From the IMG/VR virus record IMGVR_UViG_3300029993_000005, positions 1-64,000 of that record: a DNA stretch of 64,000 nt, one strand, 5' to 3'. Below, in pieces: positions 1,615-63,628 of this stretch. A program made the position numbers and the translations under genes. Each line of letters starts with the position of its first letter. The stretch's first letter is position 1. Below the pieces are notes generated by a model, which was given only the letters and a program-made list of their open reading frames with translations, searched no databases and was not told where the DNA came from.

Positions 1615-1655
1615 AAATGGGGATACCAACAGTGCAGTGAGTAGTATCCCCATTT
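1615..1655 (-). terminator. 12-bp stem-loop after nadV (possible terminator)
   Basis: aaatggggatac 1615-1626 / gtatccccattt 1644-1655, 17-nt loop. Confidence 0.5.
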
Positions 1656-1663
1656 ATTTACTA
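1655..1663 (-). promoter_or_regulatory. TAGTAAATA motif
   Basis: One of 9 intergenic copies, all upstream of minus-strand starts. Confidence 0.55.
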
Positions 1664-1682
1664 CGTGCTATAATAGGTGTGA

Positions 1683-3074
1683 TTACTTCAGATTGCTATT
1701 TGCCCGGACTTGCGCAAAGGTCTGGTCGTTGTACGATACACCATTCTCGTACACAACACGCAGAAGATTCTGACTCTCAGGACGCGAGCCTTTCGGGACA
1801 GCAATCATTTTGCCTGTAGCGTCATATACAACCATCTGACGACCCTTCAGCGACGCTTTCTCAGGTGCAGTAATCGGACTCTTGTTGATACCCGTCCAAT
1901 GTTCACCATCAGCGGAAATCGCTGAAGCCTTCTGCGCCCAACCTAAGTCATCCCGCATAACTTCTTGCAACAGCGCACCACCCATACCGTACCCGTTATT
2001 CTCGATTGAGAGCTTGTTAAGCTCCAAAGCGTGACAGATACCGTTAATGGATGTACGGTTTACGCCGTCACCCTGGATAATGCGTGCTGCAGGGTTCACC
2101 ACATCGTAACCCTTCTTATTGGTGTGGAAACCGTAAGAGTTAGCGATAGACTTAACCGCGTAAACAACTTCTGCGATAGGCTTACCTGAGTCAAGACGGA
2201 TGACGGCGGTACCACCTTTCGCCAAGACCTTATCCTTCAACTGCTTGCCCCAGATGTTATCTACTGAGTTACGTTGATCGTAAGCATCGCAAACACACGC
2301 GTACTTCTTGCCTTCGCCACCATACACATCAATCATGCGTTCGTAAGCTTGGGCTTCCCTTTCACGACCCCATGCGGTCACGGTGAAATGTTCCATGGCA
2401 GGAATTGAATACCCCGCCATCCATTCATCGTAGAACTCGGTTGCGGCCTCTAAGGCTGGGACAGTATCAGTGCCCATAAAGTTGATCAAATGCGACATAC
2501 CACCAAGCGCAGCTGATTCTTCAGAACTGGCACCGCGACCCCCAAAGTCATGCAAGCGAAATGCAAGCTCTTCCTCGGGATTATCGCACGTTTGCTCTAA
2601 CCACTTACGCAAGTCCTGTTTGATATGCCAGCTCAGTGTAGCGACCGAAGACTGATACCATGCAGCACGCAGAATCTCGGTCTCAAGAAACGAACCAAGA
2701 GTCGGCAATAACGGGTCCGTGCTTACTACCTGATAACACGGGACACCGACCGGAACAATCAACCCCTCGGGAAGAGCTTCAATGCGAACCGGAGGCAGTC
2801 CGTTATGGACCTCAACGATACGCTTGAACTCTTCGTATGGAAAGATGCCGCAGTGCTCGACAATACGACGGTTTGCGTACTCCACACTTTCCATTGTCAG
2901 CGGATTCTTCATCAGCTTCCGCTTCCAACTTTGGAGACCAAACCACAGTACCTGCTTGTACATGTTCAGACTACGAGCTGAACCATAGTTACTGGCGTAT
3001 TTCAAATCGTCGGGCAGCTGCGGTCCATGCGAATACTTGTAGCTGTCCGACCCTAAAGCAAATCCGTAAGTCAT
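1683..3074 (-). CDS. nadV: nicotinamide phosphoribosyltransferase (NAMPT)
   Basis: DSYKYSH, LHDFGGRG, GTDT, SIPAMEH, IRLDSG, IIQGDG and GMGGALLQ motifs. Confidence 0.95.
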   Translation of the reverse strand: MTYGFALGSDSYKYSHGPQLPDDLKYASNYGSARSLNMYKQVLWFGLQSWKRKLMKNPLTMESVEYANRRIVEHCGIFPYEEFKRIVEVHNGLPPVRIEALPEGLIVPVGVPCYQVVSTDPLLPTLGSFLETEILRAAWYQSSVATLSWHIKQDLRKWLEQTCDNPEEELAFRLHDFGGRGASSEESAALGGMSHLINFMGTDTVPALEAATEFYDEWMAGYSIPAMEHFTVTAWGREREAQAYERMIDVYGGEGKKYACVCDAYDQRNSVDNIWGKQLKDKVLAKGGTAVIRLDSGKPIAEVVYAVKSIANSYGFHTNKKGYDVVNPAARIIQGDGVNRTSINGICHALELNKLSIENNGYGMGGALLQEVMRDDLGWAQKASAISADGEHWTGINKSPITAPEKASLKGRQMVVYDATGKMIAVPKGSRPESQNLLRVVYENGVSYNDQTFAQVRANSNLK

Positions 3075-3075
3075 G

Positions 3076-3126
3076 GCAAATCTCCTTTGCAGTTTTTAAA
3101 GACCCAGGCTCTCTGCCTAGGGTTTG
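3076..3126 (-). promoter_or_regulatory. Twin-hairpin 5' leader of nadV
   Basis: Hairpin with AGAGA loop at 3103-3122, then GCAAA-GGAGA-TTTGC around the SD at 3076-3090; same design upstream of nadM. Confidence 0.6.
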
Positions 3127-3156
3127 GTCTAGTATAAACGACCGAACACGGAATTA

Positions 3157-4275
3157 TTAATCACACGGAATCAAGTTAATCATCTTATGGATGATCCAGA
3201 AGTGATCCGAGTATAGCTCATGCGCTTGAAGTAGCCCGAGCGGTACCCACTTGACCTCTTCGAAATCATCGTTTGCCTCTACGAGAGGTAAAGAAGTATT
3301 GTCGTTCAGTAGATACAGATACGCATGCGTGATGATGCGTCCCCGGTCATCTGACCGATTCGGATCAGAGAACACGTGCTTGAACCTGAATGACAGGTCC
3401 AACATTGAACGCGGTAACTTAATGCGTGTTTCCTCGTGAGATTCACGCAATGAACTGTCAGCTAACACTTCGTCATCGTGTGCAAATCCACCTGGTAGCG
3501 CCCACAGTCCTTTACCAGGATTCAATTTGCGTTTACCCAGCAGTACGTGTGATGACTGAATGAACACTGAATCAGTAGTCGTCATTATAGGACGATAGGG
3601 TTTGTTGCCCGCATACTGGTGCTCAATTTTGTACTGAGCAGCAAAGTCACGCTGATCGCGCAAACCATCTATAAACTCAACGTTACGTGGAATCCAAGTA
3701 TCAAGATACTCCGCCACGGGTTCAGGTACGTGCTGCCGTGAATAGTTCCACGTACCGGCCAGAATGGAATCGCGTAGATCCGTTGCATTTAGAGTCACAC
3801 CTAAGCCGGGCATACCCAACTGTTGTACCTTGTAACCATGCACGTTGACTGAACCCCACTGCGGGAATTTCTTCAGATAGTACGAGGTATGGTCCTTAGA
3901 GAAACCAATCAGTCCTATAGTCCTAGGTATAGGCCAATCATCATCTGCAAGTTTGTTCTGAACGTAAGCAACCTTCTTATGGACATCCATACACCAGTGG
4001 AAATCGTGGTCATGCATGTGATCGTCTAAGAACTGAACGATGATGCGACTGTCTCTGATTTCCTGCTTGTACGTGCGCCATAGCATCTCTTCGACTTCAA
4101 CTGCCGTCCAGGGATTCTTTCGGGTACGAGGGCGGTTGGCTGAACCCGTCAAGACCAGTACATGACGCGCTTTCTTTAATGCTTCATCAATAACATGCTT
4201 GTGGCCATTATGTAAGGGGCGAAATCGACCAATGAACACAAGCATATCGAATTCATACTCATAGATGTTTGACAT
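3157..4275 (-). CDS. nadM: bifunctional NMN adenylyltransferase / Nudix (ADP-ribose) hydrolase
   Basis: GRFRPLHNGH nucleotidyltransferase motif, NATDLR, Nudix box ALPGGFAHDDEVLADSSLRESHEET; start moved to ATG 4275 behind GGAG. Confidence 0.93.
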   Translation of the reverse strand: MSNIYEYEFDMLVFIGRFRPLHNGHKHVIDEALKKARHVLVLTGSANRPRTRKNPWTAVEVEEMLWRTYKQEIRDSRIIVQFLDDHMHDHDFHWCMDVHKKVAYVQNKLADDDWPIPRTIGLIGFSKDHTSYYLKKFPQWGSVNVHGYKVQQLGMPGLGVTLNATDLRDSILAGTWNYSRQHVPEPVAEYLDTWIPRNVEFIDGLRDQRDFAAQYKIEHQYAGNKPYRPIMTTTDSVFIQSSHVLLGKRKLNPGKGLWALPGGFAHDDEVLADSSLRESHEETRIKLPRSMLDLSFRFKHVFSDPNRSDDRGRIITHAYLYLLNDNTSLPLVEANDDFEEVKWVPLGLLQAHELYSDHFWIIHKMINLIPCD

Positions 4276-4276
4276 T

Positions 4277-4325
4277 TGCAAATCTCCTTTGCAGTTAATA
4301 AAAGAACACTCTCTGTGTTCAGTTT
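4277..4325 (-). promoter_or_regulatory. Twin-hairpin 5' leader of nadM
   Basis: GAACAC-AGAGA-GTGTTC at 4304-4320; TGCAAA-GGAGA-TTTGCA at 4277-4293. Confidence 0.6.
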
Positions 4326-4352
4326 GATTCAATTTGTATTTACTCCGCCGTT

Positions 4353-4670
4353 TTAATGACGAAAATCCTTAGGGTGTTGTCTCGTACTCCGACAGGAATG
4401 TGCGCACACGATGTAACCACAATTGTTTGTCTGACATTGAACGAACGTTTTTAGTTGGATGACGGTCATAATCACTGTGATATGCAGGCTTGAATAAATT
4501 AACTGCTTGAGTTGTCCCAGTTTTTCCTTAGGCACCAACTTCAGTAATTCAGCCGTGCGAGCTTTCTCGCTTTCAAGCTCGATGTTGGCCTGCATCCACA
4601 AATTCTTGAAATGCTCGGCCAGCGCGGCTTGGGAACGAACTCCGTTGCATAGGTCATCCGCGATTGACAT
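4353..4670 (-). CDS. hypothetical, paralogue of 22839-23030
   Basis: Shared AEHFKNLWMQA; start moved to ATG 4670 behind GAGG. Confidence 0.75.
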   Translation of the reverse strand: MSIADDLCNGVRSQAALAEHFKNLWMQANIELESEKARTAELLKLVPKEKLGQLKQLIYSSLHITVIMTVIQLKTFVQCQTNNCGYIVCAHSCRSTRQHPKDFRH

Positions 4671-4678
4671 AGTAGTCC

Positions 4679-5029
4679 TCAGATTTGAGCCGAAACTAAC
4701 ATCTTCGCGAATTTGCAGGCGTTCGACCAACCGCTAGTAGTGGGTTGGAAACGAGCAATTGGACTAACCCCGGAGGACGCGAAGTGCGGGTCTAATTTGT
4801 TTTGTGCTTGGTCCAGAAGTTCAGCCACCGAGGAGTAACCAAGATAAACCAAGGTCTTCATCCCTTCATAGTTTTTGGCATCGGGGTAGTGAACTTGAAG
4901 AACCAACACGTCTTGGTCCAGGCCTGGGAATGTTCGCGAATTGATGATCTTGAAATTCGATGGACTTGGATTGCTGTTGGGTGCAGCGTAAGGAGACGAC
5001 GAGCAACTCTTTAGCGGTGAGAGTCCCAT
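4679..5029 (-). CDS. hypothetical, paralogue of 12765-13121
   Basis: Shared SCSSSPYA..NSNP.P.NFKI, HYPDAKN.EG.K.LVY, DPHF. Confidence 0.85.
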   Translation of the reverse strand: MGLSPLKSCSSSPYAAPNSNPSPSNFKIINSRTFPGLDQDVLVLQVHYPDAKNYEGMKTLVYLGYSSVAELLDQAQNKLDPHFASSGVSPIARFQPTTSGWSNACKFAKMLVSAQI

Positions 5030-5031
5030 GA

Positions 5032-5625
5032 CTACTCCTCAAAGGGAATGAAACGGGAAAGAACCCGTTCAAGGTCAGCGAATAAAATTGAGTGACGACC
5101 TTCCTTTTCACTATTGACGGTGTACAGCGTAGGATTGGGCGAAGTATACCAACCGGGTGCAGCTTTGTAGGCTTTGACGAAGGCACGTAGGCGGGAAACT
5201 GCGTCCCTGCTCGTCCCACCAACCTTCTTTAGTGGTTGGTGGGAAGACACACTGGAGTCTACACGTTTAACTAAGGCCTCTGCCGTATGAACGGCATCAC
5301 GGGGACTTAAATACGGCCTATACTTAGCTGGTACTGTATCACACTTCGACACCCAGCGAATCGTAGTATCGTGCCAAGTGATCGTATGGATATACGCATC
5401 GGGCTTCTCGCTGCCCATCTCGTCCAGCTCTCTAAATGCGTCTTCAAGTTCTCTCGCTGCTTCTTCTGCACTGTCGTTCGCCGTTCGATCGGGATCCGGC
5501 TTGGATAGTGTCAGAAAGTTTGAAACAACGTGGTTGTTGACCGTAAGCTTAGCTTCAGCCACTAGCTCCGGACCAAGCTTGATGTTAGGAGCGCATAGAA
5601 TTGCAAGTGCATCAGTGATGTTCAT
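5032..5625 (-). CDS. hypothetical protein
   Basis: 197-aa ORF in the minus-strand array, AGGA RBS. Confidence 0.75.
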   Translation of the reverse strand: MNITDALAILCAPNIKLGPELVAEAKLTVNNHVVSNFLTLSKPDPDRTANDSAEEAARELEDAFRELDEMGSEKPDAYIHTITWHDTTIRWVSKCDTVPAKYRPYLSPRDAVHTAEALVKRVDSSVSSHQPLKKVGGTSRDAVSRLRAFVKAYKAAPGWYTSPNPTLYTVNSEKEGRHSILFADLERVLSRFIPFEE

Positions 5626-5699
5626 ATCAATTTCCTAATAGACGTCTACGATTTCTACTGAGTTTTAAATGATCGGCTTCCGTTGGGTCCCATAGAATA

Positions 5700-6164
5700 T
5701 CATAGAATATGCTGGCGGAAGTCAATATCCCAGGTACGTGGTGCATGCATGGCGAAACGTGGGTGGTAACTATCAGATTCAGATTTCCTAATGTCGAGGC
5801 GTAAGATTTGTAGGTCTTTCTCTAGTGGCAGGCACGCGAGATCCAGCTCATTTAACATGAGCATCAGTCCGTAGTCAGTGGGGGCAAAGACCGGGCTTTT
5901 ATACGCGCAGTCCACTCCTCTAGGTGAGGTCCATGGCCTATAGACTTCACCGACGCGCACCATGAGACCCGCCTTTACCAGCGCCTTACACGTATTGGAT
6001 ATACCAAGTGCTACATAGCCCACACGCCACAAGTTGTCGAACGTCCGTGGGCTTAGCTTGTGAATGTGACGAGCTTGCAGCCCTCTCAAGTCCTTGAAGG
6101 TGGTCCATCTAGTGTAGAAGGTGAAGGCCCCGAGTACTGCCCTATGTTTTAGGTTGAGTTGCAT
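5700..6164 (-). CDS. hypothetical protein (possible winged helix)
   Basis: 154-aa ORF; GISNTCKALVKAGLMVRVG resembles a wHTH recognition helix plus wing. Confidence 0.6.
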   Translation of the reverse strand: MQLNLKHRAVLGAFTFYTRWTTFKDLRGLQARHIHKLSPRTFDNLWRVGYVALGISNTCKALVKAGLMVRVGEVYRPWTSPRGVDCAYKSPVFAPTDYGLMLMLNELDLACLPLEKDLQILRLDIRKSESDSYHPRFAMHAPRTWDIDFRQHIL

Positions 6165-6779
6165 TATTGGTTAGTTCCTGCAATACGTGGTCCTCAATCG
6201 CACGGGCGAAGGCCTGCCGCAACATTGGTTCCCACTCTTTGTACGGCCGTCCGCTGTCTACGATAGCGCGTGGATCCAGCCCTTCCCACATGGCGCACAC
6301 CTGATTGGGTTCCAGCCGTTTGTAACCGGGGTCGTTGATGGATCGCCAAAAATCGTGGTCAAAACGTGAAGTGCCATGGCCATACGTGCTATGGTCTTTC
6401 CAGACTTCCCCCTCGGTGATCTGATGCTTAACTATATAGGCCTTAACTGCAGAAATAGATTCAAAATCTGGGTACGATTGTTGCGGATCATACGAGTAGA
6501 TATGATAGCTCGTCTGGTGACCCCAAGCGCGTTCAAGCTTCCATATGTGTCTACCACGGTAGTCCCTGAGCCGACGCCTGTCCACAATGCGTACCTCGCC
6601 ATAGCGACCGGGCTTGCGGTATATATATACCCACGCTTTATCGATTCGATAACACCGCCAACTAATACTTGGCAATACTTGTTACGGTCGTAGCTTATGA
6701 TCTCGACTTCGCGCACGGGTGCCTCTGCGTGCGGGCGGTCACCCAATTGGGTTATCGGATAGTCAGTCCAGGCTTTCAG
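6142..6779 (-). pseudogene. Gene split by a +2 slip in a (TA)5 tract; CTG start overlapping the upstream TGA
   Basis: Removing one TA at 6620-6629 joins MKAWTDYP...IKRGYIY to RKPGRYGEV..., giving 212 codons. Confidence 0.65.
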
Positions 6780-7153
6780 CGTAAGTAGTCCTCGTCGTCA
6801 TCGTCAACAACATTTATGACTCTGTAAATTTCTAACTCTGTACCATACAGTGCTTCAGCCTCCTTTATGAAAAAGTGCGTAGGACTCAACAAGAACGTAA
6901 CGCATACTTCATGCTCTGGTCTATGCTTGTCAGCTGGGTAACTATTGACCGCAATGTAATAACCACCGACCATCATGTTGAACGAAGCACGTCCTTCTGA
7001 GAGTGCGTCGTAATTCTCATCTATGATTTCCCGCATGTCTTTCAGAATCAGCTGCTCAATGTCCTGAACTGACCCGTAAGGGTACGCAGTCACCTGCCCC
7101 TTAAGCTTTAAGGCAACTACGCGAAGCTCGACTTCGTTGTAGGAGTATTTCAT
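6776..7153 (-). CDS. hypothetical protein
   Basis: 125-aa ORF, ATGA-coupled. Confidence 0.75.
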   Translation of the reverse strand: MKYSYNEVELRVVALKLKGQVTAYPYGSVQDIEQLILKDMREIIDENYDALSEGRASFNMMVGGYYIAVNSYPADKHRPEHEVCVTFLLSPTHFFIKEAEALYGTELEIYRVINVVDDDDEDYLR

Positions 7154-12358: not shown

Positions 12359-12433
12359 TGGTCTGCCCTCTAGGAATCGAACCTAGACCCACAGCTTAGA
12401 AGGCTGTTGCTCTATCCGTTGAGCTAAGGGCAG
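12359..12433 (-). tRNA. tRNA-Arg (anticodon UCU), CCA encoded
   Basis: Full cloverleaf: CTGCCCT/AGGGCAG acceptor, GCTC/GAGC D stem, ACAGC-CTTCTAA-GCTGT, CTAGG-TTCGATT-CCTAG, A73-CCA. Confidence 0.97.
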
Positions 12434-26318: not shown

Positions 26319-27269
26319 TTATCTTATGTGTTGTTGCAACCTTGTGAATAGTTTTTGAACCTGATTATCCGTGTACCCGAAGTAAGTTTGAGCCTTCTTC
26401 TGGTACCTGCTGAATGCTACATTATCAACTAATACCGAATTGTCGGATCCCAAGAATTCAGAAAATCCTTCATGGAAGTGTCCGGCACAACACAACAAAA
26501 ATTCTTGCGCGTCCTCACGAACCCTGTGCGATATATTTACTAGGGCCTCCAGATGCTCCTTAGCATGCGCTAAATAGGTGCTAGGGGCCTCCAAAGACAG
26601 TACTTCATCCACCTGTACATGATAGCTCTCGGTCATACCCTCGTGGTTGACGTACAAGCGTTGTCGTCCGGGACTCGTGTGATAAGTAATTAAGGTCTGT
26701 CCTGTGTTGTGAATCGCTGATTTTGCCGTGTTCTCAAAGTGCAGCAACGATTCAAAACGTGGGTACGACATATACAACGCCTTTATTGCTGCTGTCTCCA
26801 TGTCGGCTTGCAGATCATCCCTGCGTACACCATAACTCTTGATCAGAAAAGTCATCTTCTTGCTGATAAACTTTCCGATGTACGAGGACAAGGACTGACC
26901 AGTAATCGTGTCCGAGACTAAGGTATCGAAGTCCTCCACCGAGTATGCAGGATAAGTCAAAGGCAAGTGTTTCAGATTCAACCTAGATAGAAACTTAGCA
27001 TCTTTTAAAGTGACTCCAAAGTCAGAGGCCTTTGGCTTAGGTGAACCGAACCTAGATTTGTAGAAGGCCCAAGCATACAGCTTGCAGTTCTTTAACACCT
27101 CTCCGTCTGTTCGCACCATAGAGAGTACACGTTCGGCCTTCTCAGGGTCACCTACTAGTTTGACTAGTGTTCGTTGATCAATATCCGGTCTGTGAAACAG
27201 ATAAGCAAATAAAGCACCGCCAACATATGCCATCTCATGACTGGATAGCCCCAATTTATTTTGCAACAT
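26319..27269 (-). CDS. putative divergent sigma70-family factor
   Basis: RRDDLQADMETAAIKALYMSYPRFESLLHFENTAKSAIHN resembles region 2; C-terminal AQTYFGYTDNQVQKLFTRLQQHIR resembles region 4 HTH; ATG 27269 behind GGGGGA. Confidence 0.55.
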   Translation of the reverse strand: MLQNKLGLSSHEMAYVGGALFAYLFHRPDIDQRTLVKLVGDPEKAERVLSMVRTDGEVLKNCKLYAWAFYKSRFGSPKPKASDFGVTLKDAKFLSRLNLKHLPLTYPAYSVEDFDTLVSDTITGQSLSSYIGKFISKKMTFLIKSYGVRRDDLQADMETAAIKALYMSYPRFESLLHFENTAKSAIHNTGQTLITYHTSPGRQRLYVNHEGMTESYHVQVDEVLSLEAPSTYLAHAKEHLEALVNISHRVREDAQEFLLCCAGHFHEGFSEFLGSDNSVLVDNVAFSRYQKKAQTYFGYTDNQVQKLFTRLQQHIR

Positions 27270-28050: not shown

Positions 28051-28157
28051 ACTGTCTAGTATGAGTCCCTTAATGTGTAGCCTAGTCCCTAATCAAAGGT
28101 CTAGATCCCTTGTGAACTAATGTAGCCCCGAGTCCCAAGTATAGATGGGCTACATTA
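28051..28157. repeat. 20-nt periodic TCCCT motifs plus an 11-bp hairpin
   Basis: tccct at 28066, 28086 and 28106, tccca at 28133; taatgtagccc 28118-28128 / gggctacatta 28147-28157. Confidence 0.7.
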
Positions 28158-29510: not shown

Positions 29511-29519
29511 TATTTACTA
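29511..29519 (-). promoter_or_regulatory. TAGTAAATA motif
   Basis: Intergenic, upstream of 29450. Confidence 0.55.
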
Positions 29520-31765: not shown

Positions 31766-32191
31766 TTAAATCAAGAAATCGTCCTTGCTGATTTTCTTGA
31801 CCTTGGTTTGCGCCGGAACTTTCGGACCCGGCTTTGTTGCTTGCGGACGGATCTTATTCTCAACTTTACCCTTGGTGTTGGCTACTTTAGCCTTCGGTGC
31901 CGGGGCAGCTTGGACTTTGGCGTTAGCACGAACCTTACGTACCGGCTCGTCATCTTCCTCAGCTGCACGCTTGGCACGCGGACCCTTCGGGGCACCCAGC
32001 TTCTTACCTTGGGTCGTGCCCTTAGCTTCAGCCTTTTCCTTAGCAGCTGCAGCGCGAGCCTTGATGTTTTCAATGCGTTCCGACAGCTTTTCATTCTGAG
32101 CTGTCAGCTTTGCATTTTCACGACTCAGATTTGCGACTACTGCCGCAATGTTCTTTGCTTGTTGCACTACGTTTTCTTGAGACGTTGCCAT
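31766..32191 (-). CDS. Lys/Ala-rich basic protein with N-terminal coiled coil
   Basis: Start moved to ATG 32191 behind AAAGGAAA. Confidence 0.8.
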   Translation of the reverse strand: MATSQENVVQQAKNIAAVVANLSRENAKLTAQNEKLSERIENIKARAAAAKEKAEAKGTTQGKKLGAPKGPRAKRAAEEDDEPVRKVRANAKVQAAPAPKAKVANTKGKVENKIRPQATKPGPKVPAQTKVKKISKDDFLI

Positions 32192-32253: not shown

Positions 32254-32262
32254 TATTTACTA
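32254..32262 (-). promoter_or_regulatory. TAGTAAATA motif
   Basis: Intergenic, upstream of 32191. Confidence 0.55.
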
Positions 32263-35687: not shown

Positions 35688-36182
35688 TTATTTACGATCA
35701 GGAAACAGCTTGGAATTAGTATCAATAATTAGGTCGACTGCGTCTACTGGGACTTCCATTTGCGTGCTGATTTCTTGTTTGGTTGCTTGAGAAACCCACA
35801 TAGAACGCATACGGCCTATGATTTGGTCAAAGGTTTTGCCTTGGTCTTTACCATCAATCAGATGCTGTTCTACCTTACGTGTTTCAGTCTCAATACCATA
35901 CCAATATTTTAGAAGCATGGACCGGTTGGTACTTACCCACTCAGCAACAGATGCTAAGTCCTGATGCGACATACCTTTTGGGATTTTAGTTAAGGCTTCT
36001 GGATGTGGTGCTATGGACAACGACATGTTCAGACTATTGTTTTTGAAATCTGTCGTAGCTTGTGCAACCTTAATACGCGGTACCTTTTTGTTTGATGGTG
36101 CGTCACTGATCATAACAGCCAAGGGCAGACCCGTATCATTTCTTGATAGTCTGGACATGCCGGTTATTTCATGTTTGCTCAT
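35688..36182 (-). CDS. TGLP...LLKYW family protein, copy 2
   Basis: Tandem paralogue of 36202-36708; start moved to ATG 36182. Confidence 0.85.
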   Translation of the reverse strand: MSKHEITGMSRLSRNDTGLPLAVMISDAPSNKKVPRIKVAQATTDFKNNSLNMSLSIAPHPEALTKIPKGMSHQDLASVAEWVSTNRSMLLKYWYGIETETRKVEQHLIDGKDQGKTFDQIIGRMRSMWVSQATKQEISTQMEVPVDAVDLIIDTNSKLFPDRK

Positions 36183-36201: not shown

Positions 36202-36708
36202 TTATTTACGAACAGGAAACAAAGCTCGATTTCGTTTAACGATAAGCTCAACAGCCTGAATATTTATTTTAGCTAAAGCTGCCCGGGCCTGCGGCGTCAA
36301 AGATAGGTTCCACGCAGTACGTAACAGGTCTAAGGTAGTGTCAAAGGGCACACCGTAGTCTTTGTTCGAAATAAGCAAATTCTGTACAGTAATGCTGTCC
36401 GTGGTTATACCATACCAATATTTCAGGAGTAGCGAGCGATTCGACACAACCCAATTCGCAACTTTTCTAACGTCGCTAGCTTTAAACTTTATGCCTACAG
36501 GTGGGTCCATCAATTTTTTAGGCTCAAGACTAATAGACAATGAAAAATTCGGGCCTTTGTCGACTAAGCCGTCAGTGGAGTGTGCGATCTTGACGCTAGG
36601 GTCTTTCTTATTTTGAGGTGCTGCGCGAACCATCACAGCAAGAGGCAATCCTGTATGCTGTTGGGCCAGATTCGACATACCAAATATTTCATGCTTGCTC
36701 ATTTTCAT
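36202..36708 (-). CDS. TGLP...LLKYW family protein, copy 3
   Basis: MSKHEI.GMS.L...TGLPLAVM, NRS.LLKYWYGI and LFP.RK shared with copy 2. Confidence 0.85.
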   Translation of the reverse strand: MKMSKHEIFGMSNLAQQHTGLPLAVMVRAAPQNKKDPSVKIAHSTDGLVDKGPNFSLSISLEPKKLMDPPVGIKFKASDVRKVANWVVSNRSLLLKYWYGITTDSITVQNLLISNKDYGVPFDTTLDLLRTAWNLSLTPQARAALAKINIQAVELIVKRNRALFPVRK

Positions 36709-44404: not shown

Positions 44405-44413
44405 TATTTACTA
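44405..44413 (-). promoter_or_regulatory. TAGTAAATA motif
   Basis: Intergenic, upstream of 44314. Confidence 0.55.
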
Positions 44414-45053: not shown

Positions 45054-45062
45054 TATTTACTA
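45054..45062 (-). promoter_or_regulatory. TAGTAAATA motif
   Basis: Intergenic, upstream of 45036. Confidence 0.55.
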
Positions 45063-45092
45063 GCTTGAAATTAAAAGCTCACAACTAGCTAT

Positions 45093-45863
45093 TTACTCTG
45101 CTTCTTGAGTCTCAGCATTTTGTCCGCGTGTGCGCTTCGGTGGCATCAATACGTCCTTGAATGCAGCGGGCAACGTGCGCGAGGACTTACGGAAAGAGCG
45201 ATAAACCGGATCACTTTTTTCCAGGTCAACAATGACGGGACGTCCCGTTTTTTCATTCTTCGTGATTTGCTGAATGTACTTGAAGAGCACAGACAATGAA
45301 CCATCAGCGGCCTTGCGGTTGACGCGCAGGATCAGACGAAATACGGTGTTGGCAGGAAGTCGCATTGCGCCCTTGACCTCGGTACGACCTTTAATTTGAG
45401 TTGGAAATTTCTTGTCATTGGTTGCCTTGAACAAAGGTCCCGAGATACGAGCCATCAAGCCATTCAATGTACGTGGATCATAGGATCCCAAATCTGCTTT
45501 CTTGTTGTCCGCTGCGTTGACATCATAACGACCTTGATAGCGAATGGCGCGAACGGCGTTACCCAAGAGTCCATCTTTTTCGGTACGGACCGTGACTTCA
45601 AGAAAATGCGGTTTGAAATCCGCTGGTGCCTGGAACGTAGGTAGTCCTTTGCGGGCCACTGTTTTTGCTGCAGGCTTAGCCTTTGTTTTTTGGTTTGTTG
45701 ATGTGGTGGCGTGGGCTTGGATGGGTGCTGATGTCGGACTTTTGGATTTCAGCTTTGGACTTGAACTTGATGACTTTGTGGATGAGCTACTGGCTACTTT
45801 CTTTTGTGTCGGTGCTGGGTGCTGGGTGGAAGCTTGATTCTTCGCTACTTTCTTGTTGATCAT
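45093..45863 (-). CDS. basic protein with Ser/Lys-rich disordered N-terminus
   Basis: 256-aa ORF, CAGGAAA RBS. Confidence 0.8.
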   Translation of the reverse strand: MINKKVAKNQASTQHPAPTQKKVASSSSTKSSSSSPKLKSKSPTSAPIQAHATTSTNQKTKAKPAAKTVARKGLPTFQAPADFKPHFLEVTVRTEKDGLLGNAVRAIRYQGRYDVNAADNKKADLGSYDPRTLNGLMARISGPLFKATNDKKFPTQIKGRTEVKGAMRLPANTVFRLILRVNRKAADGSLSVLFKYIQQITKNEKTGRPVIVDLEKSDPVYRSFRKSSRTLPAAFKDVLMPPKRTRGQNAETQEAE

Positions 45864-47301: not shown

Positions 47302-47310
47302 TATTTACTA
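47302..47310 (-). promoter_or_regulatory. TAGTAAATA motif
   Basis: Intergenic, upstream of 47288. Confidence 0.55.
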
Positions 47311-47888: not shown

Positions 47889-47897
47889 TATTTACTA
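47889..47897 (-). promoter_or_regulatory. TAGTAAATA motif
   Basis: Intergenic, upstream of 47845. Confidence 0.55.
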
Positions 47898-58676: not shown

Positions 58677-58747
58677 CGCTTGTTCCTTTTGAACTAGCCT
58701 TTGGATATTGCGAATCTCTGGGCAGGGCTAGGCTAAGTCAAAAATCT

Positions 58748-59482
58748 TTATTTAGCTACTTTGGACGCAGCAATAAAAGACTTAACAGCAGCCACAGCTT
58801 TCGGATGATTCTTCAGGTTGTCACGGATGAACCGCAATTCTTTACGGCTGAACTTCGAACGTGTGCGAATCGCGTTTAAGGCCGAGATATCGTTCTCGGC
58901 CTTAATCTTGTCGACAAACATTAGGAACGATGGTTTGTAACCATCGTTGTCCTCAATGCCAGCTAGTGCAGCTTTCGCCACATTAACTTCTTCGTAGTCC
59001 TGTCCGTAGACGTCAACACGCAAGTCCTCGTCGTCCTTGTCCTTGCCGCCCTGCGAATTTGGCACATACATATCAACGTTAGAGTCACTAATGGTCCGGG
59101 CTGTCCCTGCCTGACGCACGTGACGATCAGAAGCTAGCAAACGTTGCTGTTCCTCACGTGCACCTTCACGTTCAAGAATTTTTTGAGCTTGGACCGGGTC
59201 AACCAGCGATAATAGACCGCTGTTAATTGCTGACCTGAATTCAGAACTCTCCAGCAGACGTTCTTTGGGGAACTTGGAGCTTGCGTCAAATGGGAGCCAG
59301 GATTCTTGAATAATCAGCGGGTCACCACCATTACCATTTAGTTTCGGAATACTAACAATAACGTTGCCACGGAAACCATGAACAGAGACTGCAGCGGCAG
59401 CAGAAGTAGACGCAGTATTCAGCACCCACACTGAACCCTTGACACCCTGCTCTTCAAGTTGCGATACGGTAAGAAATTTCAT
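58748..59482 (-). CDS. hypothetical protein
   Basis: 244-aa ORF downstream of a TAGTAAATA motif. Confidence 0.8.
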   Translation of the reverse strand: MKFLTVSQLEEQGVKGSVWVLNTASTSAAAAVSVHGFRGNVIVSIPKLNGNGGDPLIIQESWLPFDASSKFPKERLLESSEFRSAINSGLLSLVDPVQAQKILEREGAREEQQRLLASDRHVRQAGTARTISDSNVDMYVPNSQGGKDKDDEDLRVDVYGQDYEEVNVAKAALAGIEDNDGYKPSFLMFVDKIKAENDISALNAIRTRSKFSRKELRFIRDNLKNHPKAVAAVKSFIAASKVAK

Positions 59483-59592
59483 AAGTAAAACTCCATCTAT
59501 TTAATAAGTTTGCGCTTTAGTCTGTGGATTTGTGGGGTGGGTAGGTTTTGTTTTAAAAGCCGTCTGTTAAACAGATCTTTGCTTATGCACTT

Positions 59593-59601
59593 TATTTACT
59601 A
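59593..59601 (-). promoter_or_regulatory. TAGTAAATA motif
   Basis: Intergenic, upstream of 59482. Confidence 0.55.
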
Positions 59602-59614
59602 GCGGAGTAGAACT

Positions 59615-60466
59615 TTAGTCCAAAGGTGTAATCCTTGGTTTTATAGAGCCTTCAGGTTCCATGTGGTTCATCAATTCAGTCCAATTGCCGTAGGCTGTTA
59701 GAGGTTCCATATTTAGGGCTACTACTTTTGTCCTAGTAATGGGTCCTAACGGACGGTTCTTCTCCGGAATTCTTTCTATTTCAGCTTCAGTTAAATATTC
59801 TTGTACCTTTACCCTGCTGACATAAGTTCCACGTTTGAAGAACTGCGGGTAGTCGTTCCAATTGACACCCTTAGCAATCATCAGGTCATGCATATTAGCC
59901 GTATTCTTTTTATGCAGTTCTTTCTGCGTGTACAGAGCCTGTGCCGCCATAGACACACTATTCTTTGTCGCATCCAGTTCTCGCCACAAGAAATTATTGT
60001 AGACTTCCGTCGTATTCGGCAATTGAAATACGCGACAATCGAAAATAGGGCTCAGATGATTGCACTTGGGTAGAAAAAATCCAACCTGCTGATTGAAATT
60101 AACACTGGCACCAGCAGCTAATAGCGACGTCCATTTCTGGATACGTCCGTCAAACATCATCTCTGCGGGGGTAGGCATTGGCTTCTCCTCATCCCACTTT
60201 TCATTACGCCAGAATAAAGTTATTTCGTCACTCTGAGTGTACCCAAGATGAGCCTCAAATTTGTCTACCAAATAACGCGTGGTCTCGATCATGCAGCGAC
60301 TAAAACCTGAGTCATAAGGAAGGTCTAGTCCTTTCGTGAACGTGTGAAAAGAACGACCATCTAGTCGTGCCATGATAGGCAATCGCTGCATTAGTCGACG
60401 GCCAGCATTCTCCATTTCATAGCGCTTCATTCGGTCACCCAGCGGGTCTTTCTTGTTACTTGGCAT
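59615..60466 (-). CDS. thg1: tRNA-His guanylyltransferase / Thg1-like 3'-5' polymerase
   Basis: GDRMKRYE, RLDGRSFH, YTQSDEI, FDGRIQK, FDCR, WRELDA.KNS, GVNWND. Confidence 0.93.
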   Translation of the reverse strand: MPSNKKDPLGDRMKRYEMENAGRRLMQRLPIMARLDGRSFHTFTKGLDLPYDSGFSRCMIETTRYLVDKFEAHLGYTQSDEITLFWRNEKWDEEKPMPTPAEMMFDGRIQKWTSLLAAGASVNFNQQVGFFLPKCNHLSPIFDCRVFQLPNTTEVYNNFLWRELDATKNSVSMAAQALYTQKELHKKNTANMHDLMIAKGVNWNDYPQFFKRGTYVSRVKVQEYLTEAEIERIPEKNRPLGPITRTKVVALNMEPLTAYGNWTELMNHMEPEGSIKPRITPLD

Positions 60467-60671
60467 ATTTGTAATAGTCCTCAGTGTTCAGCAGGTTGTG
60501 GATTATACGTTGCCAGTCTTCTTTTGGAAACTGTGCATGAAACTTAGCCTTCTGTTCTTTATACAGCTTCTCGCTTAACGTTGCATCATCCGCTTCAATA
60601 ACTGACATGAGGATCGTGCCTGAGCTAACAATCATGCCGTGATAAACAACTGAACCTTTGTGCCTACTCAT
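60456..60671 (-). CDS. hypothetical protein
   Basis: 71-aa coupled ORF. Confidence 0.65.
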   Translation of the reverse strand: MSRHKGSVVYHGMIVSSGTILMSVIEADDATLSEKLYKEQKAKFHAQFPKEDWQRIIHNLLNTEDYYKYAK

Positions 60672-60976
60672 TTGGTCAACTCTTTTTGTAATTGGTTTAC
60701 AACAGAACGTTTGAGCACCGCTTCTAATGAAGGATCCAACAAAGGTAGGCCAACAATCGAGGCATAAGTGTTGGCACTAAACTTAGAACTGGCAAAATTC
60801 TCGTCATAAGTACAACGACCATGAACCCGGTGCTTCCACATGCAGCTATTTTTTGGGAGCGGGCAATTGGCAACTGCTATTTGCTGCTGGATAACCACAC
60901 AAAAAGTTCCACGTTCAGGATCAATTTTCGGAGTCAGAGTCAGAGTATTTTGCATTTGATATTCCGTTTTGTACAC
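60668..60976 (-). CDS. Cys-containing hypothetical
   Basis: C.....CMW......C pattern. Confidence 0.6.
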   Translation of the reverse strand: MYKTEYQMQNTLTLTPKIDPERGTFCVVIQQQIAVANCPLPKNSCMWKHRVHGRCTYDENFASSKFSANTYASIVGLPLLDPSLEAVLKRSVVNQLQKELTK

Positions 60977-61571
60977 TAGCCATAAGTTCGGTCAAGGCCT
61001 GCATCTGCGCCAAGCTAAAGGAACCGTCGAGATGGATACGATCTTTATCATACTCGTCCCGCACGTCGTAACGTGCGTAGTCCAGTTCACGAACTTCGGT
61101 ATGGACGCGTGACAGCTCTGCATCGATGGCGTCCTGGGTCCAGGTTTTGTACACCGGCAGTTCGCTGGACTTTAATCTCGGGCATTTAGAACTAATCAGT
61201 TCTAGGAACTGGGCACCACTGTTTATATGAAAACGGACGTCGACAACCACGTGCATTTCCACACGTTGGATAATATCGTTCTGATCCACATACACAGTGA
61301 CCGCGTTGTTAGTACCCATGTCCGCCAGTATCTGATCAATCTCTACAACACGCAGGGCCACAGGTCGCAACGTTGAGATGGCAGACAGCGCAATATGGTC
61401 CCACTTCGTACCCTTCAAATATTCACAGACCGGAAGCTTGATAAATACCTGACTCAATGGTGTGGATCCGGCAATAGTCTCTGGACCTACAATCGGCTTC
61501 GGTTCCGTTGGAACATCATGTAGAGCTTTGTATTGGCAGAACTCGCCGTTCTCGTTTTTATAGTTGATCAT
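60921..61571 (-). CDS. hypothetical, central segment resembling the I78/potato-I inhibitor fold
   Basis: LRP..LRV...I.AD...N.VTVYVDQNDIIQRV. Confidence 0.5.
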   Translation of the reverse strand: MINYKNENGEFCQYKALHDVPTEPKPIVGPETIAGSTPLSQVFIKLPVCEYLKGTKWDHIALSAISTLRPVALRVVEIDQILADMGTNNAVTVYVDQNDIIQRVEMHVVVDVRFHINSGAQFLELISSKCPRLKSSELPVYKTWTQDAIDAELSRVHTEVRELDYARYDVRDEYDKDRIHLDGSFSLAQMQALTELMASVQNGISNAKYSDSDSEN

Positions 61572-61771
61572 AAATATCTCCAGCTGGTGACCAGCCGTCC
61601 AACAGAATTGTCCACATCATGGTCAAAGAGCCAGCCGTAATGACCGCAAAGCAAAGTGTAGCGAGCAGTGGTAATGCGTCCGTTGGAGAACTGGACTTCG
61701 ACCTTGACGTCTGTGGCGGGATAATTAAAAATAGTCCATTCGCGGTCGCTGGTCATTCGATGTATCTCCAC
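61568..61771 (-). CDS. small DUF551-like protein
   Basis: W..FNYP...VEV...A.Y...W...V.SWRYL; paralogue of the neighbour. Confidence 0.6.
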   Translation of the reverse strand: MEIHRMTSDREWTIFNYPATDVKVEVQFSNGRITTARYTLLCGHYGWLFDHDVDNSVGRLVTSWRYL

Positions 61772-61974
61772 CTTTGGATTTCACTTGGGCTTATGTGCAT
61801 GTGTGGCGCGTCGTCGGACATCCACCAGTCGACAAGCCCATGATGATGTATGCGCGCCTTGATAAATATTCCGGTCTTCATTTCGAGCTCGACCAAGCGG
61901 CCTACCACTGGATAATTGTAGGTCATCCACGTGTTACACTGCTTGGTCTCGAAGTCTTGAGTTGGAAGATACAT
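61753..61974 (-). CDS. small DUF551-like protein
   Basis: W.TYNYP...VEL...A...W...I.RWRYI. Confidence 0.6.
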   Translation of the reverse strand: MYLPTQDFETKQCNTWMTYNYPVVGRLVELEMKTGIFIKARIHHHGLVDWWMSDDAPHMHISPSEIQRWRYIE

Positions 61975-61976
61975 GA

Positions 61977-62996
61977 TTAGGATTCCTTTGCATTGTTAAG
62001 CACCCGCCTACGGACTTGGCACACGTGCTTACGTGTCTCTACATCAACGTCTAAGCCCCGGACCCAGGTTTGAAAGAAGTCCTCTGTCTTGATGATCAGT
62101 TCTTTACATTCGGATAAATCTTCAGTCAGGACCAGGGCTAAGTCAGATTTTGATTTGTAGTTCTTAATAATTGCGATGTTAGTCAGGGACGCCCAATCAG
62201 AAGGTCCTACATCAGCACCATCTTGAATCACCAACTTTACCAAATCGAACTTCGAGTGCGGTATCAGTTTCAAGTCTTCTCTATGCTCCAACACAATATT
62301 GTGCAACTTGTATTTCGGCTCGTGATTGACCAATGTTATGTTGAAATCTTGAGCACTATTGAACTCGATATGATGGAAATACTTGGGTAGGGACTCTCCA
62401 AAATTAGTCTGATACAGGGTGCCGCAGTAATGCGTGTTACGAATCCTGTGTGCCGTATGTAAGTGACCGCCAATTGCCACAGCCTTTGACTTGGACAATG
62501 ACTCATCGGTAGCTAAACGTCCGCTATCACCTTTCGAGCCATAGACCTCGTTGTGAAATATGTTAAGGGCATTAGGATCGAAATTGGTAGAAGGATAAGG
62601 CAAGAATCTTACGTCCACACCATCAACGGTTATTGATTTAGGACGGGTAAAATATCGAACATTGGGTTGCTTGAAATTCTGTAGAATTTGAAGGCTGTGA
62701 CCGGTGTCCGGGGTCAGTCCGTAGAGATCATGATTTCCAGTCATCAAATAAAACGTAAAATCAGGATTGCTGGAAAACAGTCCCGAGAGAGCCAACATGC
62801 CAGGATAGCTCCCCCTAGGCCCGTCAAAGATATCACCAGGAAATATGATTTTGTTCAGGCCTTTTGAACGTCCATAGGCCAGTACTTTATCAACCTCAGA
62901 AACTACAAACTGGTCGGGGTCCTCTATGTATTTCGATAGTCCACCAGTTCCATCTGAGGCGGTAAGATGCAAGTCACCAACGCAAAGCAGCTCCAC
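61977..62996 (-). CDS. SbcD/Mre11/T4 gp47-like metallophosphoesterase nuclease
   Basis: GDLH, GDIFD, GNHD, FHNE, GGHLH, Y.GTLYQ..FGE. Confidence 0.88.
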   Translation of the reverse strand: MELLCVGDLHLTASDGTGGLSKYIEDPDQFVVSEVDKVLAYGRSKGLNKIIFPGDIFDGPRGSYPGMLALSGLFSSNPDFTFYLMTGNHDLYGLTPDTGHSLQILQNFKQPNVRYFTRPKSITVDGVDVRFLPYPSTNFDPNALNIFHNEVYGSKGDSGRLATDESLSKSKAVAIGGHLHTAHRIRNTHYCGTLYQTNFGESLPKYFHHIEFNSAQDFNITLVNHEPKYKLHNIVLEHREDLKLIPHSKFDLVKLVIQDGADVGPSDWASLTNIAIIKNYKSKSDLALVLTEDLSECKELIIKTEDFFQTWVRGLDVDVETRKHVCQVRRRVLNNAKES

Positions 62997-63592
62997 TATT
63001 TGCTCCGTTTACGTCGTGATAAAATATTCCAATAGCCAGATGCCTGGTCCTCCTCAGGTTCTAGCTCAGGTTCAAGATTTGGAAACGGATGAAATGCTGG
63101 TTTCTGTGTCGGATAGGAATGGTCACTATCAGACAAGACGCGATCAATAATAGGTTTGGGTTCTGTATCAAAGAGTCTTTGACGCTCTACAAGTCCTTCT
63201 TTGGACTTCAGCAAAAGCTTGGTGCGCCACTCAGGAATCACACGTAGTGAATCCCGTTCAACCAAATTAATGAAATCTGCGGTCCAACCAAAATTAGTTA
63301 GTGGTGCTTGCATTGTCAGATCAATGGGTATCCACGCAGCAGGAATCTTAATAGCGATGAGGTGTCTGGCTTCGTCAGCGCCATTAAACTTAGGAACCGA
63401 AAACAGAATCTCTGCCTGCTGGTGGCGAGCATGGGGAATCTGCGATGTTTCCCACGTACTAAGTTGGTGACTATTCACCACGTACAGAGGACCTTTAGCT
63501 TTAGCTAGGATCCCGCGTACCTTAGCCAAAGACTGACCCTTCAACAACCACAGAATGTAGCTCTTACGTAAATTAGCAATAATTTGTTTCAT
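62996..63592 (-). CDS. hypothetical protein
   Basis: 198-aa ORF coupled to the nuclease gene. Confidence 0.75.
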   Translation of the reverse strand: MKQIIANLRKSYILWLLKGQSLAKVRGILAKAKGPLYVVNSHQLSTWETSQIPHARHQQAEILFSVPKFNGADEARHLIAIKIPAAWIPIDLTMQAPLTNFGWTADFINLVERDSLRVIPEWRTKLLLKSKEGLVERQRLFDTEPKPIIDRVLSDSDHSYPTQKPAFHPFPNLEPELEPEEDQASGYWNILSRRKRSK

Positions 63593-63619
63593 TGAGAACT
63601 CCTTTGTATAATTACTTTT

Positions 63620-63628
63620 TATTTACTA
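63620..63628 (-). promoter_or_regulatory. TAGTAAATA motif
   Basis: Intergenic, upstream of 63592. Confidence 0.55.

What the first reader, a model, noticed from the sequence alone, without database searches (positions are those of the whole stretch)
1655..63628. Second promoter-like motif TAGTAAATA, reminiscent of the T4 late -10-only promoter
Seen: exact TAGTAAATA on the minus strand at 1655, 29511, 32254, 44405, 45054, 47302, 47889, 59593 and 63620. All nine are intergenic and 14-110 nt before a start; one further copy is in a CDS at 26534. I saw none on the plus strand, and under one copy is expected by chance in 64 kb. Variants occur at 4337 (GAGTAAATA) and 34250 (TCGTAAATA). With the exception of 47845, it precedes genes that the palindrome cassettes do not drive, including the basic and acidic low-complexity proteins. 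Established: T4 gp55 recognises TATAAATA with no -35. Inference: this is a middle/late promoter class read by a phage sigma.
Basis: partly seen in the sequence, partly recalled or inferred. Interest (0 to 1): 0.65.

Follow-up and report, generated by a model that had tools for sequence, protein, structure and literature searches.

The report
Jumbo-phage middle promoter motif TAGTAAATA
TAGTAAATA is a real, strand-specific signal of a 230-kb jumbo phage: it looks like a promoter with no -35 box that switches on the phage's DNA-replication and nucleotide-metabolism genes rather than its virion genes, it is shared by the whole phiRSL1-like phage clade, and it is probably read by one of two very divergent phage-encoded sigma-like proteins.

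Summary
TAGTAAATA occurs 10 times in the window, all on the minus strand (0.57 expected), and 32 times in the 230,110-bp phage genome. All 32 copies point the same way as the local genes and 23 are intergenic. There is no -35 signal. A purine lies 7 nt after the motif in 30 of 32 copies. The core GTAAATA recurs in Ralstonia phage phiRSL1, Burkholderia phages BcepSauron and BCSR5, Achromobacter phage Motura and in metagenomic relatives. It sits before the same orthologous genes, such as SSB in 9 of 9 genomes checked. Its targets are DNA replication, recombination and nucleotide-metabolism genes (41 against 1 virion gene), plus a tRNA. It is therefore a middle promoter class, not a T4-like late one. 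Virion genes carry a different motif, (C)AATTTnAT. The clade encodes two sigma-like proteins. The other is a clearer sigma at genome 114306-115241. I could obtain no transcript data.

The parts
1655..1663 (-). TAGTAAATA copy, directly after the stop of the NAMPT gene (1683-3074). A stem-loop and a 27-codon ORF follow it.
4337..4345 (-). Variant GAGTAAATA, 61 nt before the NMN adenylyltransferase/Nudix gene (3157-4275).
26534..26542 (-). TAGTAAATA inside the sigma-like gene, sense strand, 227 nt before the next gene. It may be an internal promoter or a chance copy. It is not conserved in phiRSL1.
29511..29519 (-). TAGTAAATA heading the gene block 29450 down to 25974, which contains the sigma-like gene. 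phiRSL1 has CAGTAAATA at the equivalent place.
32254..32262 (-). TAGTAAATA, 62 nt before the 141-aa gene at 31766-32191.
35689..35697 (-). Variant TCGTAAATA, 131 nt before the RtcB RNA ligase gene.
36203..36211 (-). Variant TCGTAAATA, 20 nt before the gene at 35688-36182.
44405..44413 (-). TAGTAAATA, 90 nt before the 332-aa gene. The orthologue in BCSR5 is preceded by CAGTAAATA.
45054..45062 (-). TAGTAAATA, 35 nt before the 199-aa gene. It forms a tandem with GAGTAAATA at 45090-45098.
47302..47310 (-). TAGTAAATA, 13 nt before the 112-aa gene.
47889..47897 (-). TAGTAAATA, 43 nt before the 160-aa gene.
59593..59601 (-). TAGTAAATA, 110 nt before the 244-aa gene (phrog_17686). Orthologues in BcepSauron and Motura also carry the motif.
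63620..63628 (-). TAGTAAATA, 27 nt before the 198-aa paralogue of that gene (phrog_17686).
26319..27269 (-). Sigma-like protein 'sigma A' (316 aa), orthologue of phiRSL1 ORF011. It is the candidate reader of the motif.
28138..28144 (-). CTATACT, a host-type -10 in the gap before the two-gene unit made of the ORF010-like gene and sigma A. The same word lies at the same place in phiRSL1 and BCSR5. BcepSauron has TTGACA-17-TAGACT there.

Best explanation
TAGTAAATA is this phage's version of a clade-wide promoter element without a -35 box, consensus (T/C)(A/C)GTAAATA. It occupies about -15 to -7, and transcription starts at a purine about 7 nt downstream. It forms the middle class of a three-class programme. 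Class 1 is early genes, driven by sigma70-type UP/-35/-10 promoters. Class 2 is this motif, before DNA replication, recombination, nucleotide- and NAD-metabolism genes, a tRNA and many small ORFs. Class 3 is (C)AATTTnAT before virion genes. Shown here: the motif's statistics, its strict strand bias, the absence of a -35, its conservation at orthologous positions, and its gene class. Inferred: that it is a promoter. I give that about 0.85. Also inferred: that host core RNA polymerase reads it with a phage-encoded sigma-like factor, about 0.65. The likeliest factor is the 26319-27269 protein ('sigma A'), about 0.4. In that model sigma A is made from a host-type promoter. It then turns on the middle genes, among them the second sigma ('sigma B', genome 114306-115241), and sigma B would read the AATTTnAT virion-gene promoters. 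The confidence given below is for 'a middle promoter read with a phage sigma-like factor'.
For: Statistics: 10 copies in the window against 0.57 expected. 32 copies in the genome against 0 for the control word. 32 of 32 are co-oriented and 23 of 32 intergenic. The consensus is sharp, with few one-mismatch variants.
Architecture: no information content from -50 to -12, and a purine 7 nt after the motif in 30 of 32 copies (p=2e-7). GAGTAAATA lies 12 nt before tRNA-Met.
Conservation: (A/C)GTAAATA is a top upstream 8-mer in phiRSL1, BcepSauron, BCSR5 and Motura. The 5' dinucleotide is lineage-specific and orientation is strict in each. The motif lies before SSB in 9 of 9 genomes, in flanks that otherwise do not align. 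It also recurs before the beta clamp, DnaB, DEAD and large helicases, dCMP deaminase, a Cas4-like nuclease, RecA and ThyA.
Gene class: 41 DNA-metabolism genes against 1 virion gene for this motif, and 4 against 13 for AATTTnAT (Fisher p=8e-9).
Sigma A: it is conserved in all five phages and in 125 metagenomic homologues. In the AF2 model (pLDDT 84.9), residues 106-202 match sigma domain 2. In an unbiased search of 48,161 chains the first 12 hits are sigma factors or sigma complexes, Z 7.3-9.1, and T4 gp55 (7d7d_F) appears at Z 7.1.
Wiring: sigma A's unit has a host-type -10, with GTAAATA further upstream. Sigma B lies downstream of GTAAATA and is always preceded by AATTTnAT. Only 'sigma A reads GTAAATA, sigma B reads AATTTnAT' places replication genes before virion genes.
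Against: No transcription start site, RNA-seq or biochemical data could be obtained. Sigma A has no sequence-level match to sigma families. Its Z scores of 7-9.6 lie in the range where helical domains can match by chance. The binding prediction gave no verdict. Full-length alignments to sigma28, sigma32 and sigma70 suggest that sigma A has a sigma4-like C-terminal domain. Such a domain would normally go with a -35 box, and none is seen. In this phage the host-type promoter before sigma A is only a -10 word with a poor -35, and it is not evident in two metagenomic relatives. Read as GTAAAT, the motif keeps A-11 and T-7, the two bases that sigma70-type domain 2 flips out (established knowledge). 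That suits sigma B, which is sigma70-like, or the host sigma70. Four of the 32 copies are followed by terminator-like hairpins. Gene calls come from my own simple caller.
Confidence: 0.6

Rival explanations
1. The promoter class is the same, but it is read by the second phage sigma ('sigma B', genome 114306-115241, orthologue of phiRSL1 ORF224). Sigma B has sigma regions 1.2 and 2 and no detectable sigma4, as T4 gp55 does.
For: Sigma B is the better-supported sigma. It matches phrog_17569 'RNA polymerase sigma factor' at 9e-78. 20 of 32 family members give weak Sigma70_r2 hits. AF2 residues 1-240 align to sigma70 residues 102-450 at Z 12-15, and every listed hit is sigma70. No Sigma70_r4 match exists anywhere in the genome, which fits a promoter without a -35. 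GTAAAT keeps A-11 and T-7. The sigma B gene sits among motif-driven genes (SSB, RecA).
Against: The operon containing sigma B is preceded in every relative by AATTTnAT, the virion-gene motif. If sigma B read GTAAATA, the AATTTnAT class would have to fire first, putting virion genes before replication genes. GTAAATA lies directly before the sigma B gene in BCSR5, L080 and L082. That suits a gene of the middle class better than the factor that starts the class. The C-terminal 70 residues are unresolved and could be a vestigial HTH.
Confidence: 0.2
2. The motif is read by the host's own sigma70 holoenzyme as a -10-only promoter. The holoenzyme may be remodelled by an early phage protein that blocks -35 recognition, as described for Thermus phage P23-45 gp39/gp76 or T4 AsiA. 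On this reading neither phage sigma is involved.
For: The motif contains a -10-like hexamer (GTAAAT or TAAATA) at the right distance from a purine. Both phage sigma genes lie downstream of GTAAATA copies, so something else may have to read the first ones. The early promoters show that the host uses ordinary TTGACA/TATACT signals.
Against: Seven to nine contiguous bases are almost invariant, including positions that sigma70 tolerates freely. There is no TG extended -10. The same core is kept in phages of different hosts and G+C contents of 45-58%. That pattern is typical of a dedicated specificity factor. The more distant relatives PhiXhv-16 and Ep032 lack the motif.
Confidence: 0.13
3. The motif is not a promoter. 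It is a strand-specific RNA-level or protein-binding signal in intergenic regions, such as an RNA cleavage or processing site, or the operator of a phage regulator.
For: Strand specificity and intergenic position would also fit an element that acts in RNA. Four copies sit just before terminator-like hairpins. No start site was mapped.
Against: The distance to the start codon varies from 13 to more than 110 nt, so it is not a translational operator. There is no dyad symmetry. The composition is -10-like with a purine at a fixed +7. The motif precedes a tRNA at promoter distance. At 92597 the expected start lies inside the 5' arm of the hairpin, as expected when a promoter overlaps the terminator of the upstream gene.
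Confidence: 0.05
4. The motif is a T4-type late promoter in the strict sense: gp55/gp33/sliding-clamp dependent and driving virion genes.
For: It shares the TAAATA core and the lack of a -35 box with T4's TATAAATA (established knowledge).
Against: TATAAATA itself is not enriched: 13 copies, of which 1 is intergenic and co-oriented. The targets are DNA-metabolism genes, not virion genes. Virion genes carry AATTTnAT. No gp55-family sequence match was found.
Confidence: 0.02

Closest known systems
Bacteriophage T4 late promoters (TATAAATA, read by gp55 with gp33 and the gp45 clamp)
   Same: Both are a single AT-rich element of 8-9 bp at the -10 position with no -35 box, nearly invariant across the genome. 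Both share the TAAATA core. A phage sigma-like protein built around a sigma domain 2 is the likely reader.
   Different: The first bases differ (TAG/CAG/TCG-T against TA-T), and T4's own word is not enriched here. This motif drives replication and nucleotide-metabolism genes rather than virion genes. The candidate sigmas are 311-316 aa and show no sequence match to gp55. Dependence on a clamp or on gp33 is untested.
Bacillus phage SPO1 sigma cascade (gp28 for middle genes, gp33/gp34 for late genes)
   Same: The model proposed here has the same logic. Host sigma makes a first phage sigma, which reads the middle promoters. These include the gene of a second phage sigma, which reads the late promoters.
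   Different: SPO1 promoters are bipartite, with -35 and -10 elements (established knowledge), whereas both phage-specific classes here are single blocks. The hosts are Gram-negative. The assignment of each sigma to a class is inferred only from promoter wiring.
Middle/late promoters without a -35 box of Thermus phage P23-45 and Xanthomonas phage Xp10, read by a remodelled host holoenzyme
   Same: These are also phage middle or late genes with -10-only promoters that contrast with canonical early promoters.
   Different: Those phages use the host sigma and an extended -10 (TG) motif (established knowledge). Here there is no TG, and two phage sigma-like genes are present.
Sigma factors annotated in jumbo phages that lack their own RNA polymerase (Iyer et al. 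2021, PMC7824862; review PMC13282480)
   Same: The literature already notes that such phages encode sigma factors that presumably direct host polymerase to phage-specific promoters.
   Different: In the papers I could search, no promoter consensus is given for the phiRSL1/Sarumanvirus/Moturavirus clade. The ORF011-family protein is annotated only as hypothetical.

Membership tests
T4-type late promoter (gp55 class) | Consensus TATAAATA centred at -10 | tested here: not met
   The motif is (T/C)(A/C)GTAAATA. TATAAATA has 13 copies in the genome, and only 1 is intergenic and co-oriented.
T4-type late promoter (gp55 class) | No -35 element | tested here: met
   Information content is about 0 from -50 to -12 in this phage and in four relatives.
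T4-type late promoter (gp55 class) | Precedes late (virion, lysis) genes | tested here: not met
   41 DNA-metabolism genes against 1 virion gene lie downstream across five phages. Virion genes carry AATTTnAT.
T4-type late promoter (gp55 class) | Read by a gp55-family sigma together with gp33 and a sliding clamp | not testable with these tools
   There is only a fold-level resemblance of sigma A residues 107-221 to gp55 (7d7d_F, Z 7.1). A beta-clamp gene exists at 179870-180883, but dependence on it cannot be computed.
Sigma70-family sigma factor: the 26319-27269 protein ('sigma A') | Sigma domain 2 fold | tested here: met
   AF2 pLDDT is 84.9. Residues 106-202 match sigma28, SigE, sigmaH and sigma70 domain 2 at Z 7-9.6, rmsd 2.5-3. 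In the unbiased search the first 12 of 48,161 chains are sigma factors or sigma complexes. The Z values are modest for a helical domain.
Sigma70-family sigma factor: the 26319-27269 protein ('sigma A') | Sequence-profile match to sigma regions 2 and 4 | tested here: not met
   Pfam finds no sigma family in any of the 36 members at E<=1. PHROGs gives only phrog_19229, function unknown. A profile search of the PDB finds nothing. hhalign against the sigma B family finds no similarity.
Sigma70-family sigma factor: the 26319-27269 protein ('sigma A') | Binds RNA polymerase core (beta' clamp helices) | tested here: inconclusive
   Complex prediction with E. coli beta' residues 250-330 gave no verdict. 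The host is unknown.
Sigma70-family sigma factor: genome 114306-115241 ('sigma B') | Regions 1.2 and 2 present | tested here: met
   Residues 1-240 align to sigma70 residues 102-450 at Z 12-15, and all hits are sigma70. It matches phrog_17569 at 9e-78. Weak Sigma70_r2 hits occur in 20 of 32 members.
Sigma70-family sigma factor: genome 114306-115241 ('sigma B') | Region 4 (-35 recognition) present | tested here: not met
   No Sigma70_r4 match at E<=1 in the six-frame genome search or in any family member. The C-terminal 70 residues form three short helices of lower confidence and remain unresolved.
Housekeeping sigma70 promoter | TTGACA, 17 bp, TATAAT | tested here: not met
   There is no -35, and the -10-like block differs from TATAAT. 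Genuine sigma70-type promoters exist elsewhere in the same genome and serve other genes.

The most novel reading that the evidence does not exclude
The phiRSL1/Sarumanvirus/Moturavirus clade of Gram-negative jumbo phages runs a two-sigma cascade on host core polymerase. An unannotated, extremely divergent sigma (ORF011 family, window 26319-27269) reads the -35-less middle promoters (T/C)(A/C)GTAAATA. A second sigma (ORF224 family) reads a second -35-less class, (C)AATTTnAT, before the virion genes. Each sigma gene is wired behind the promoter class of the preceding stage.
Probability: 0.35. Interest if true: 0.7.

Novelty: new variant of a known kind. Interest (0 to 1): 0.55.

Why it matters
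Most jumbo phages lack their own RNA polymerase. It is assumed, but rarely shown, that their sigma factors redirect the host enzyme. This analysis gives a whole clade, with cultured members on Ralstonia, Burkholderia and Achromobacter, a concrete and testable transcription map of three promoter classes. It yields about 25-40 predicted middle promoters per genome and two candidate specificity factors, one of them so far annotated as hypothetical. That would make temporal annotation of these largely unknown genomes possible. It would also add an orthogonal sigma/promoter pair to the toolbox and a new example of how sigma domain 2 can recognise a single-block promoter.

Tried and rejected
- Literature: the phiRSL1 genome and microarray paper (Yamada et al. 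2010) is not held. The Matilda preprint has a transcriptome but names no promoters, and no supplements are held. Searches for the motif words found nothing relevant. One paper search was wasted on too loose a setting.
- T4 late word: TATAAATA is not enriched.
- Terminator or processing signal: only 2-4 of the 32 copies are followed by terminator-like hairpins.
- Sequence-level classification of sigma A: Pfam, PHROGs, a PDB profile search and hhalign against sigma B all gave nothing.
- Complex prediction of sigma A residues 100-210 with E. coli beta' residues 250-330 gave no verdict, which is evidence neither way.
- The PF08281 genome search failed on the server.
- More distant phages (Xanthomonas PhiXhv-16, Erwinia Ep032, Rhizobium RHph_I42) show no AGTAAATA enrichment, so the motif is confined to the closer clade.
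- The MAFFT alignment of the SSB upstream regions is poor because spacing varies. It shows only that nothing but the motif is shared.


Full report
**What the window is.** The window is the first 64 kb of a 230,110-bp virus record (IMG/VR, estimated 97% complete, 45% G+C). DNA and protein searches place it with Ralstonia phage phiRSL1, Burkholderia phages BcepSauron, BcepSaruman and BCSR5, and Achromobacter phage Motura. These are jumbo myoviruses that have no RNA polymerase of their own. I called genes with a simple codon-usage caller: 312 genes covering 89% of the genome. All genes in the window are on the minus strand.

**The observation.** Shuffles give 0.57 copies on average.
- Nine copies are intergenic and 13-110 nt before a start codon. 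One, at 26534, is inside a CDS.
- Genome-wide there are 32 copies, against 0 for the reversed control word.
- The strand of the motif switches wherever the genes switch strand, so 32 of 32 copies are co-oriented (p=5e-10).
- 23 of 32 copies are intergenic, while 11% of the genome is intergenic (p=8e-16).
- It is the most enriched 9-mer in upstream regions, and every one-mismatch variant is rare.

**Anatomy.** Aligned on the motif, the 32 sites carry no information from -50 to -12, so there is no -35 box. There is a weak C just before the motif and A then A/G just after it. Seven nucleotides after the last A there is a purine in 30 of 32 sites (p=2e-7), preceded by a pyrimidine in 23 of 32. If that purine is +1, the motif spans -15 to -7.

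A variant, GAGTAAATA, lies 12 nt before tRNA-Met (genome 91931-92007). This argues for a transcription signal rather than a translation signal.

Four copies are followed by terminator-like hairpins. At 92597 the expected start lies inside the 5' arm of the stem, as expected when a promoter overlaps the terminator of the upstream gene.

**Conservation.** I fetched the four complete relatives and called genes in the same way. In each, (A/C)GTAAATA is among the top upstream 8-mers. The core GTAAATA is constant, while the two bases before it are lineage-specific:

| Phage | Bases before GTAAATA |
|---|---|
| This phage | TA |
| phiRSL1 | CA |
| BcepSauron, BCSR5 | TA or CA |
| Motura | TC (31 copies) |

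Orientation is strict in all of them: 14/14, 18/18, 17/18 and 31/31. None shows a -35.

The motif lies before the SSB gene in all five phages and in four metagenomic relatives. Its distance to the ATG varies, and the flanks otherwise do not align. It also recurs before the orthologues of:
- the beta clamp;
- DnaB;
- the DEAD-box helicase and the 1,500-aa helicase;
- dCMP deaminase;
- a Cas4-like nuclease;
- RecA and thymidylate synthase.

More distant phages (PhiXhv-16, Ep032, RHph_I42) show no enrichment.

**Which genes it serves.** I transferred phiRSL1's annotation by BLASTP. Genes directly downstream of the motif are 41 DNA replication, recombination or nucleotide-metabolism genes against 1 virion gene.

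A second clade-wide motif, (C)AATTTnAT(G/A)G, gives 4 against 13 (Fisher p=8e-9; orthologues are not independent). That second motif lies before the tail fibre, tail tube, baseplate W, virion structural protein, virion topoisomerase IB and DksA-like genes.

They have an AT-rich UP tract, TTGACG or TTGGCA, 16-18 bp, then TATACT, and they sit before small early-type ORFs.

The genome therefore has three promoter classes. TAGTAAATA is the middle, DNA-metabolism class, not a late one. T4's own TATAAATA is not enriched.

**Who reads it.** The genome has a sigma gene outside the window at 114306-115241, which I call sigma B.
- It matches phrog_17569 "RNA polymerase sigma factor" at 9e-78.
- 20 of 32 homologues give weak Sigma70_r2 hits.
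- In an AF2 model (pLDDT 85.6), residues 1-240 superpose on sigma70 residues 102-450 (regions 1.2 and 2) at Z 12-15.
- No region-4 match exists in the genome.

- It has no sequence-level match to anything named.
- The ESM Atlas gives sigma-like leads.
- In an AF2 model (pLDDT 84.9), residues 106-202 match sigma domain 2. In a search of 48,161 chains that does not depend on Foldseek, the first 12 hits are sigma factors or sigma complexes (Z 7.3-9.1), and T4 gp55 appears at Z 7.1. Full-length alignments to sigma28, sigma32 and sigma70 run to the C-terminus.
- These Z values are modest for a helical domain, so sigma A is a well-founded lead, not a proven sigma.

**Assigning sigma to class (inference).** The two-gene unit made of the ORF010-like gene and sigma A is preceded by a host-type promoter. 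The word is CTATACT at the same position in this phage, phiRSL1 and BCSR5 (as TGCTATACT in the latter two), and BcepSauron has TTGACA-17-TAGACT there. GTAAATA lies further upstream.

The sigma B gene lies downstream of GTAAATA. The motif is directly before it in BCSR5, L080 and L082. In this phage it lies at 113578, inside the preceding CDS. In phiRSL1 and L079 it lies before the ThyA gene further upstream. The gene just upstream of sigma B is preceded by AATTTnAT in every genome where that region was inspected (this phage, BcepSauron and four metagenomic relatives).

Only the scheme [quoted passage not shown] puts replication before virion genes. It also gives each sigma gene the promoter of the previous stage plus its own.

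Against this scheme:
- Sigma B, with no region 4 and a sigma70-like domain 2, looks the better fit for a -10-only element that keeps A-11 and T-7.
- Sigma A may have a sigma4-like domain without any -35 box to read.
- The host-type promoter before sigma A is weak in this phage and not evident in two relatives.

I therefore give about 0.85 that the motif is a promoter, about 0.65 that a phage sigma-like factor reads it, about 0.4 for sigma A specifically, about 0.2 for sigma B, and about 0.13 for the host holoenzyme.

**Comparison with what is known.** The motif works like the T4 late promoter: a single invariant AT-rich block, no -35, a TAAATA core, and a sigma built around domain 2. It fails membership on consensus and on gene class. 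The inferred cascade resembles that of SPO1.

In the literature I could search, jumbo-phage sigma factors are noted. No promoter consensus is given for this clade, and the ORF011 family is unannotated. The original phiRSL1 paper could not be read and might contain relevant data.

**Limits.** No reads, start sites or biochemistry could be obtained. Gene calls and orthology are my own. Counts across phages are not independent.

Noticed in passing
They are followed by a conserved leader with AACGAAAAGGAA and sit before small ORFs, so they are the presumed early class.
   Followed up: partly
window 32315, 46927, 53503 (minus strand); genome 113380, 121836, 142550, 151484, 191468, 203602, 216016, 221274 and others: A third clade-wide motif, (C)AATTTnAT(G/A)G with no -35, lies before virion genes. 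It also lies before the gene just upstream of the second sigma in every genome where that region was inspected. It is the candidate late promoter class. The variable base is lineage-specific: G in phiRSL1, C in Motura.
   Followed up: partly
genome 114306-115241 (+), locus L012:10306-11241: A second phage sigma with sigma70 regions 1.2 and 2 and no detectable region 4. It has 187 homologues in metagenomes, many on contigs of 190-260 kb. The clade is therefore large and mostly uncultured.
   Followed up: yes
genome 91911-92085 (+), locus L011:7911-8085: tRNA-Met (91931-92007) lies 12 nt after GAGTAAATA. It is followed by a second tRNA-like stretch (about 92013-92085, ending in ...GCAGACGCCA) that ARAGORN does not call. 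tRNA-Arg lies at window 12359-12433 (minus strand).
   Followed up: partly
genome 126144-130469 (+): The portal gene appears split into two ORFs (126144-127628 and 129564-130469, 70% and 62% identical to parts of the phiRSL1 portal). A 601-aa ORF with no phiRSL1 match lies between them. This may be an insertion such as an intron with a homing endonuclease, or an intein-like element.
   Followed up: no
genome 113412-114032 (+) and orthologues in L078-L082: The gene upstream of the second sigma encodes a conserved protein with a Cys-rich CSC.D...RWE...EIEYSNG...C(K/C)H pattern, resembling a SWIM-type zinc finger. It is always co-located with the sigma and could be a transcription cofactor.
   Followed up: no
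window 1655; genome 92597, 106430, 212291: Four motif copies are followed within 3-35 nt by G+C-rich hairpins with T tails. These could be terminators of the upstream gene overlapping the promoter, 5' stabilising stem-loops, or short non-coding transcripts.
   Followed up: partly
loci L081 (13007-15256 and 15973-19701): In one metagenomic relative the RecA-like gene (749 aa) and the terminase-position gene (1,242 aa, with faint intein and LAGLIDADG hits) are much longer than in this phage, which suggests intein insertions.
   Followed up: no
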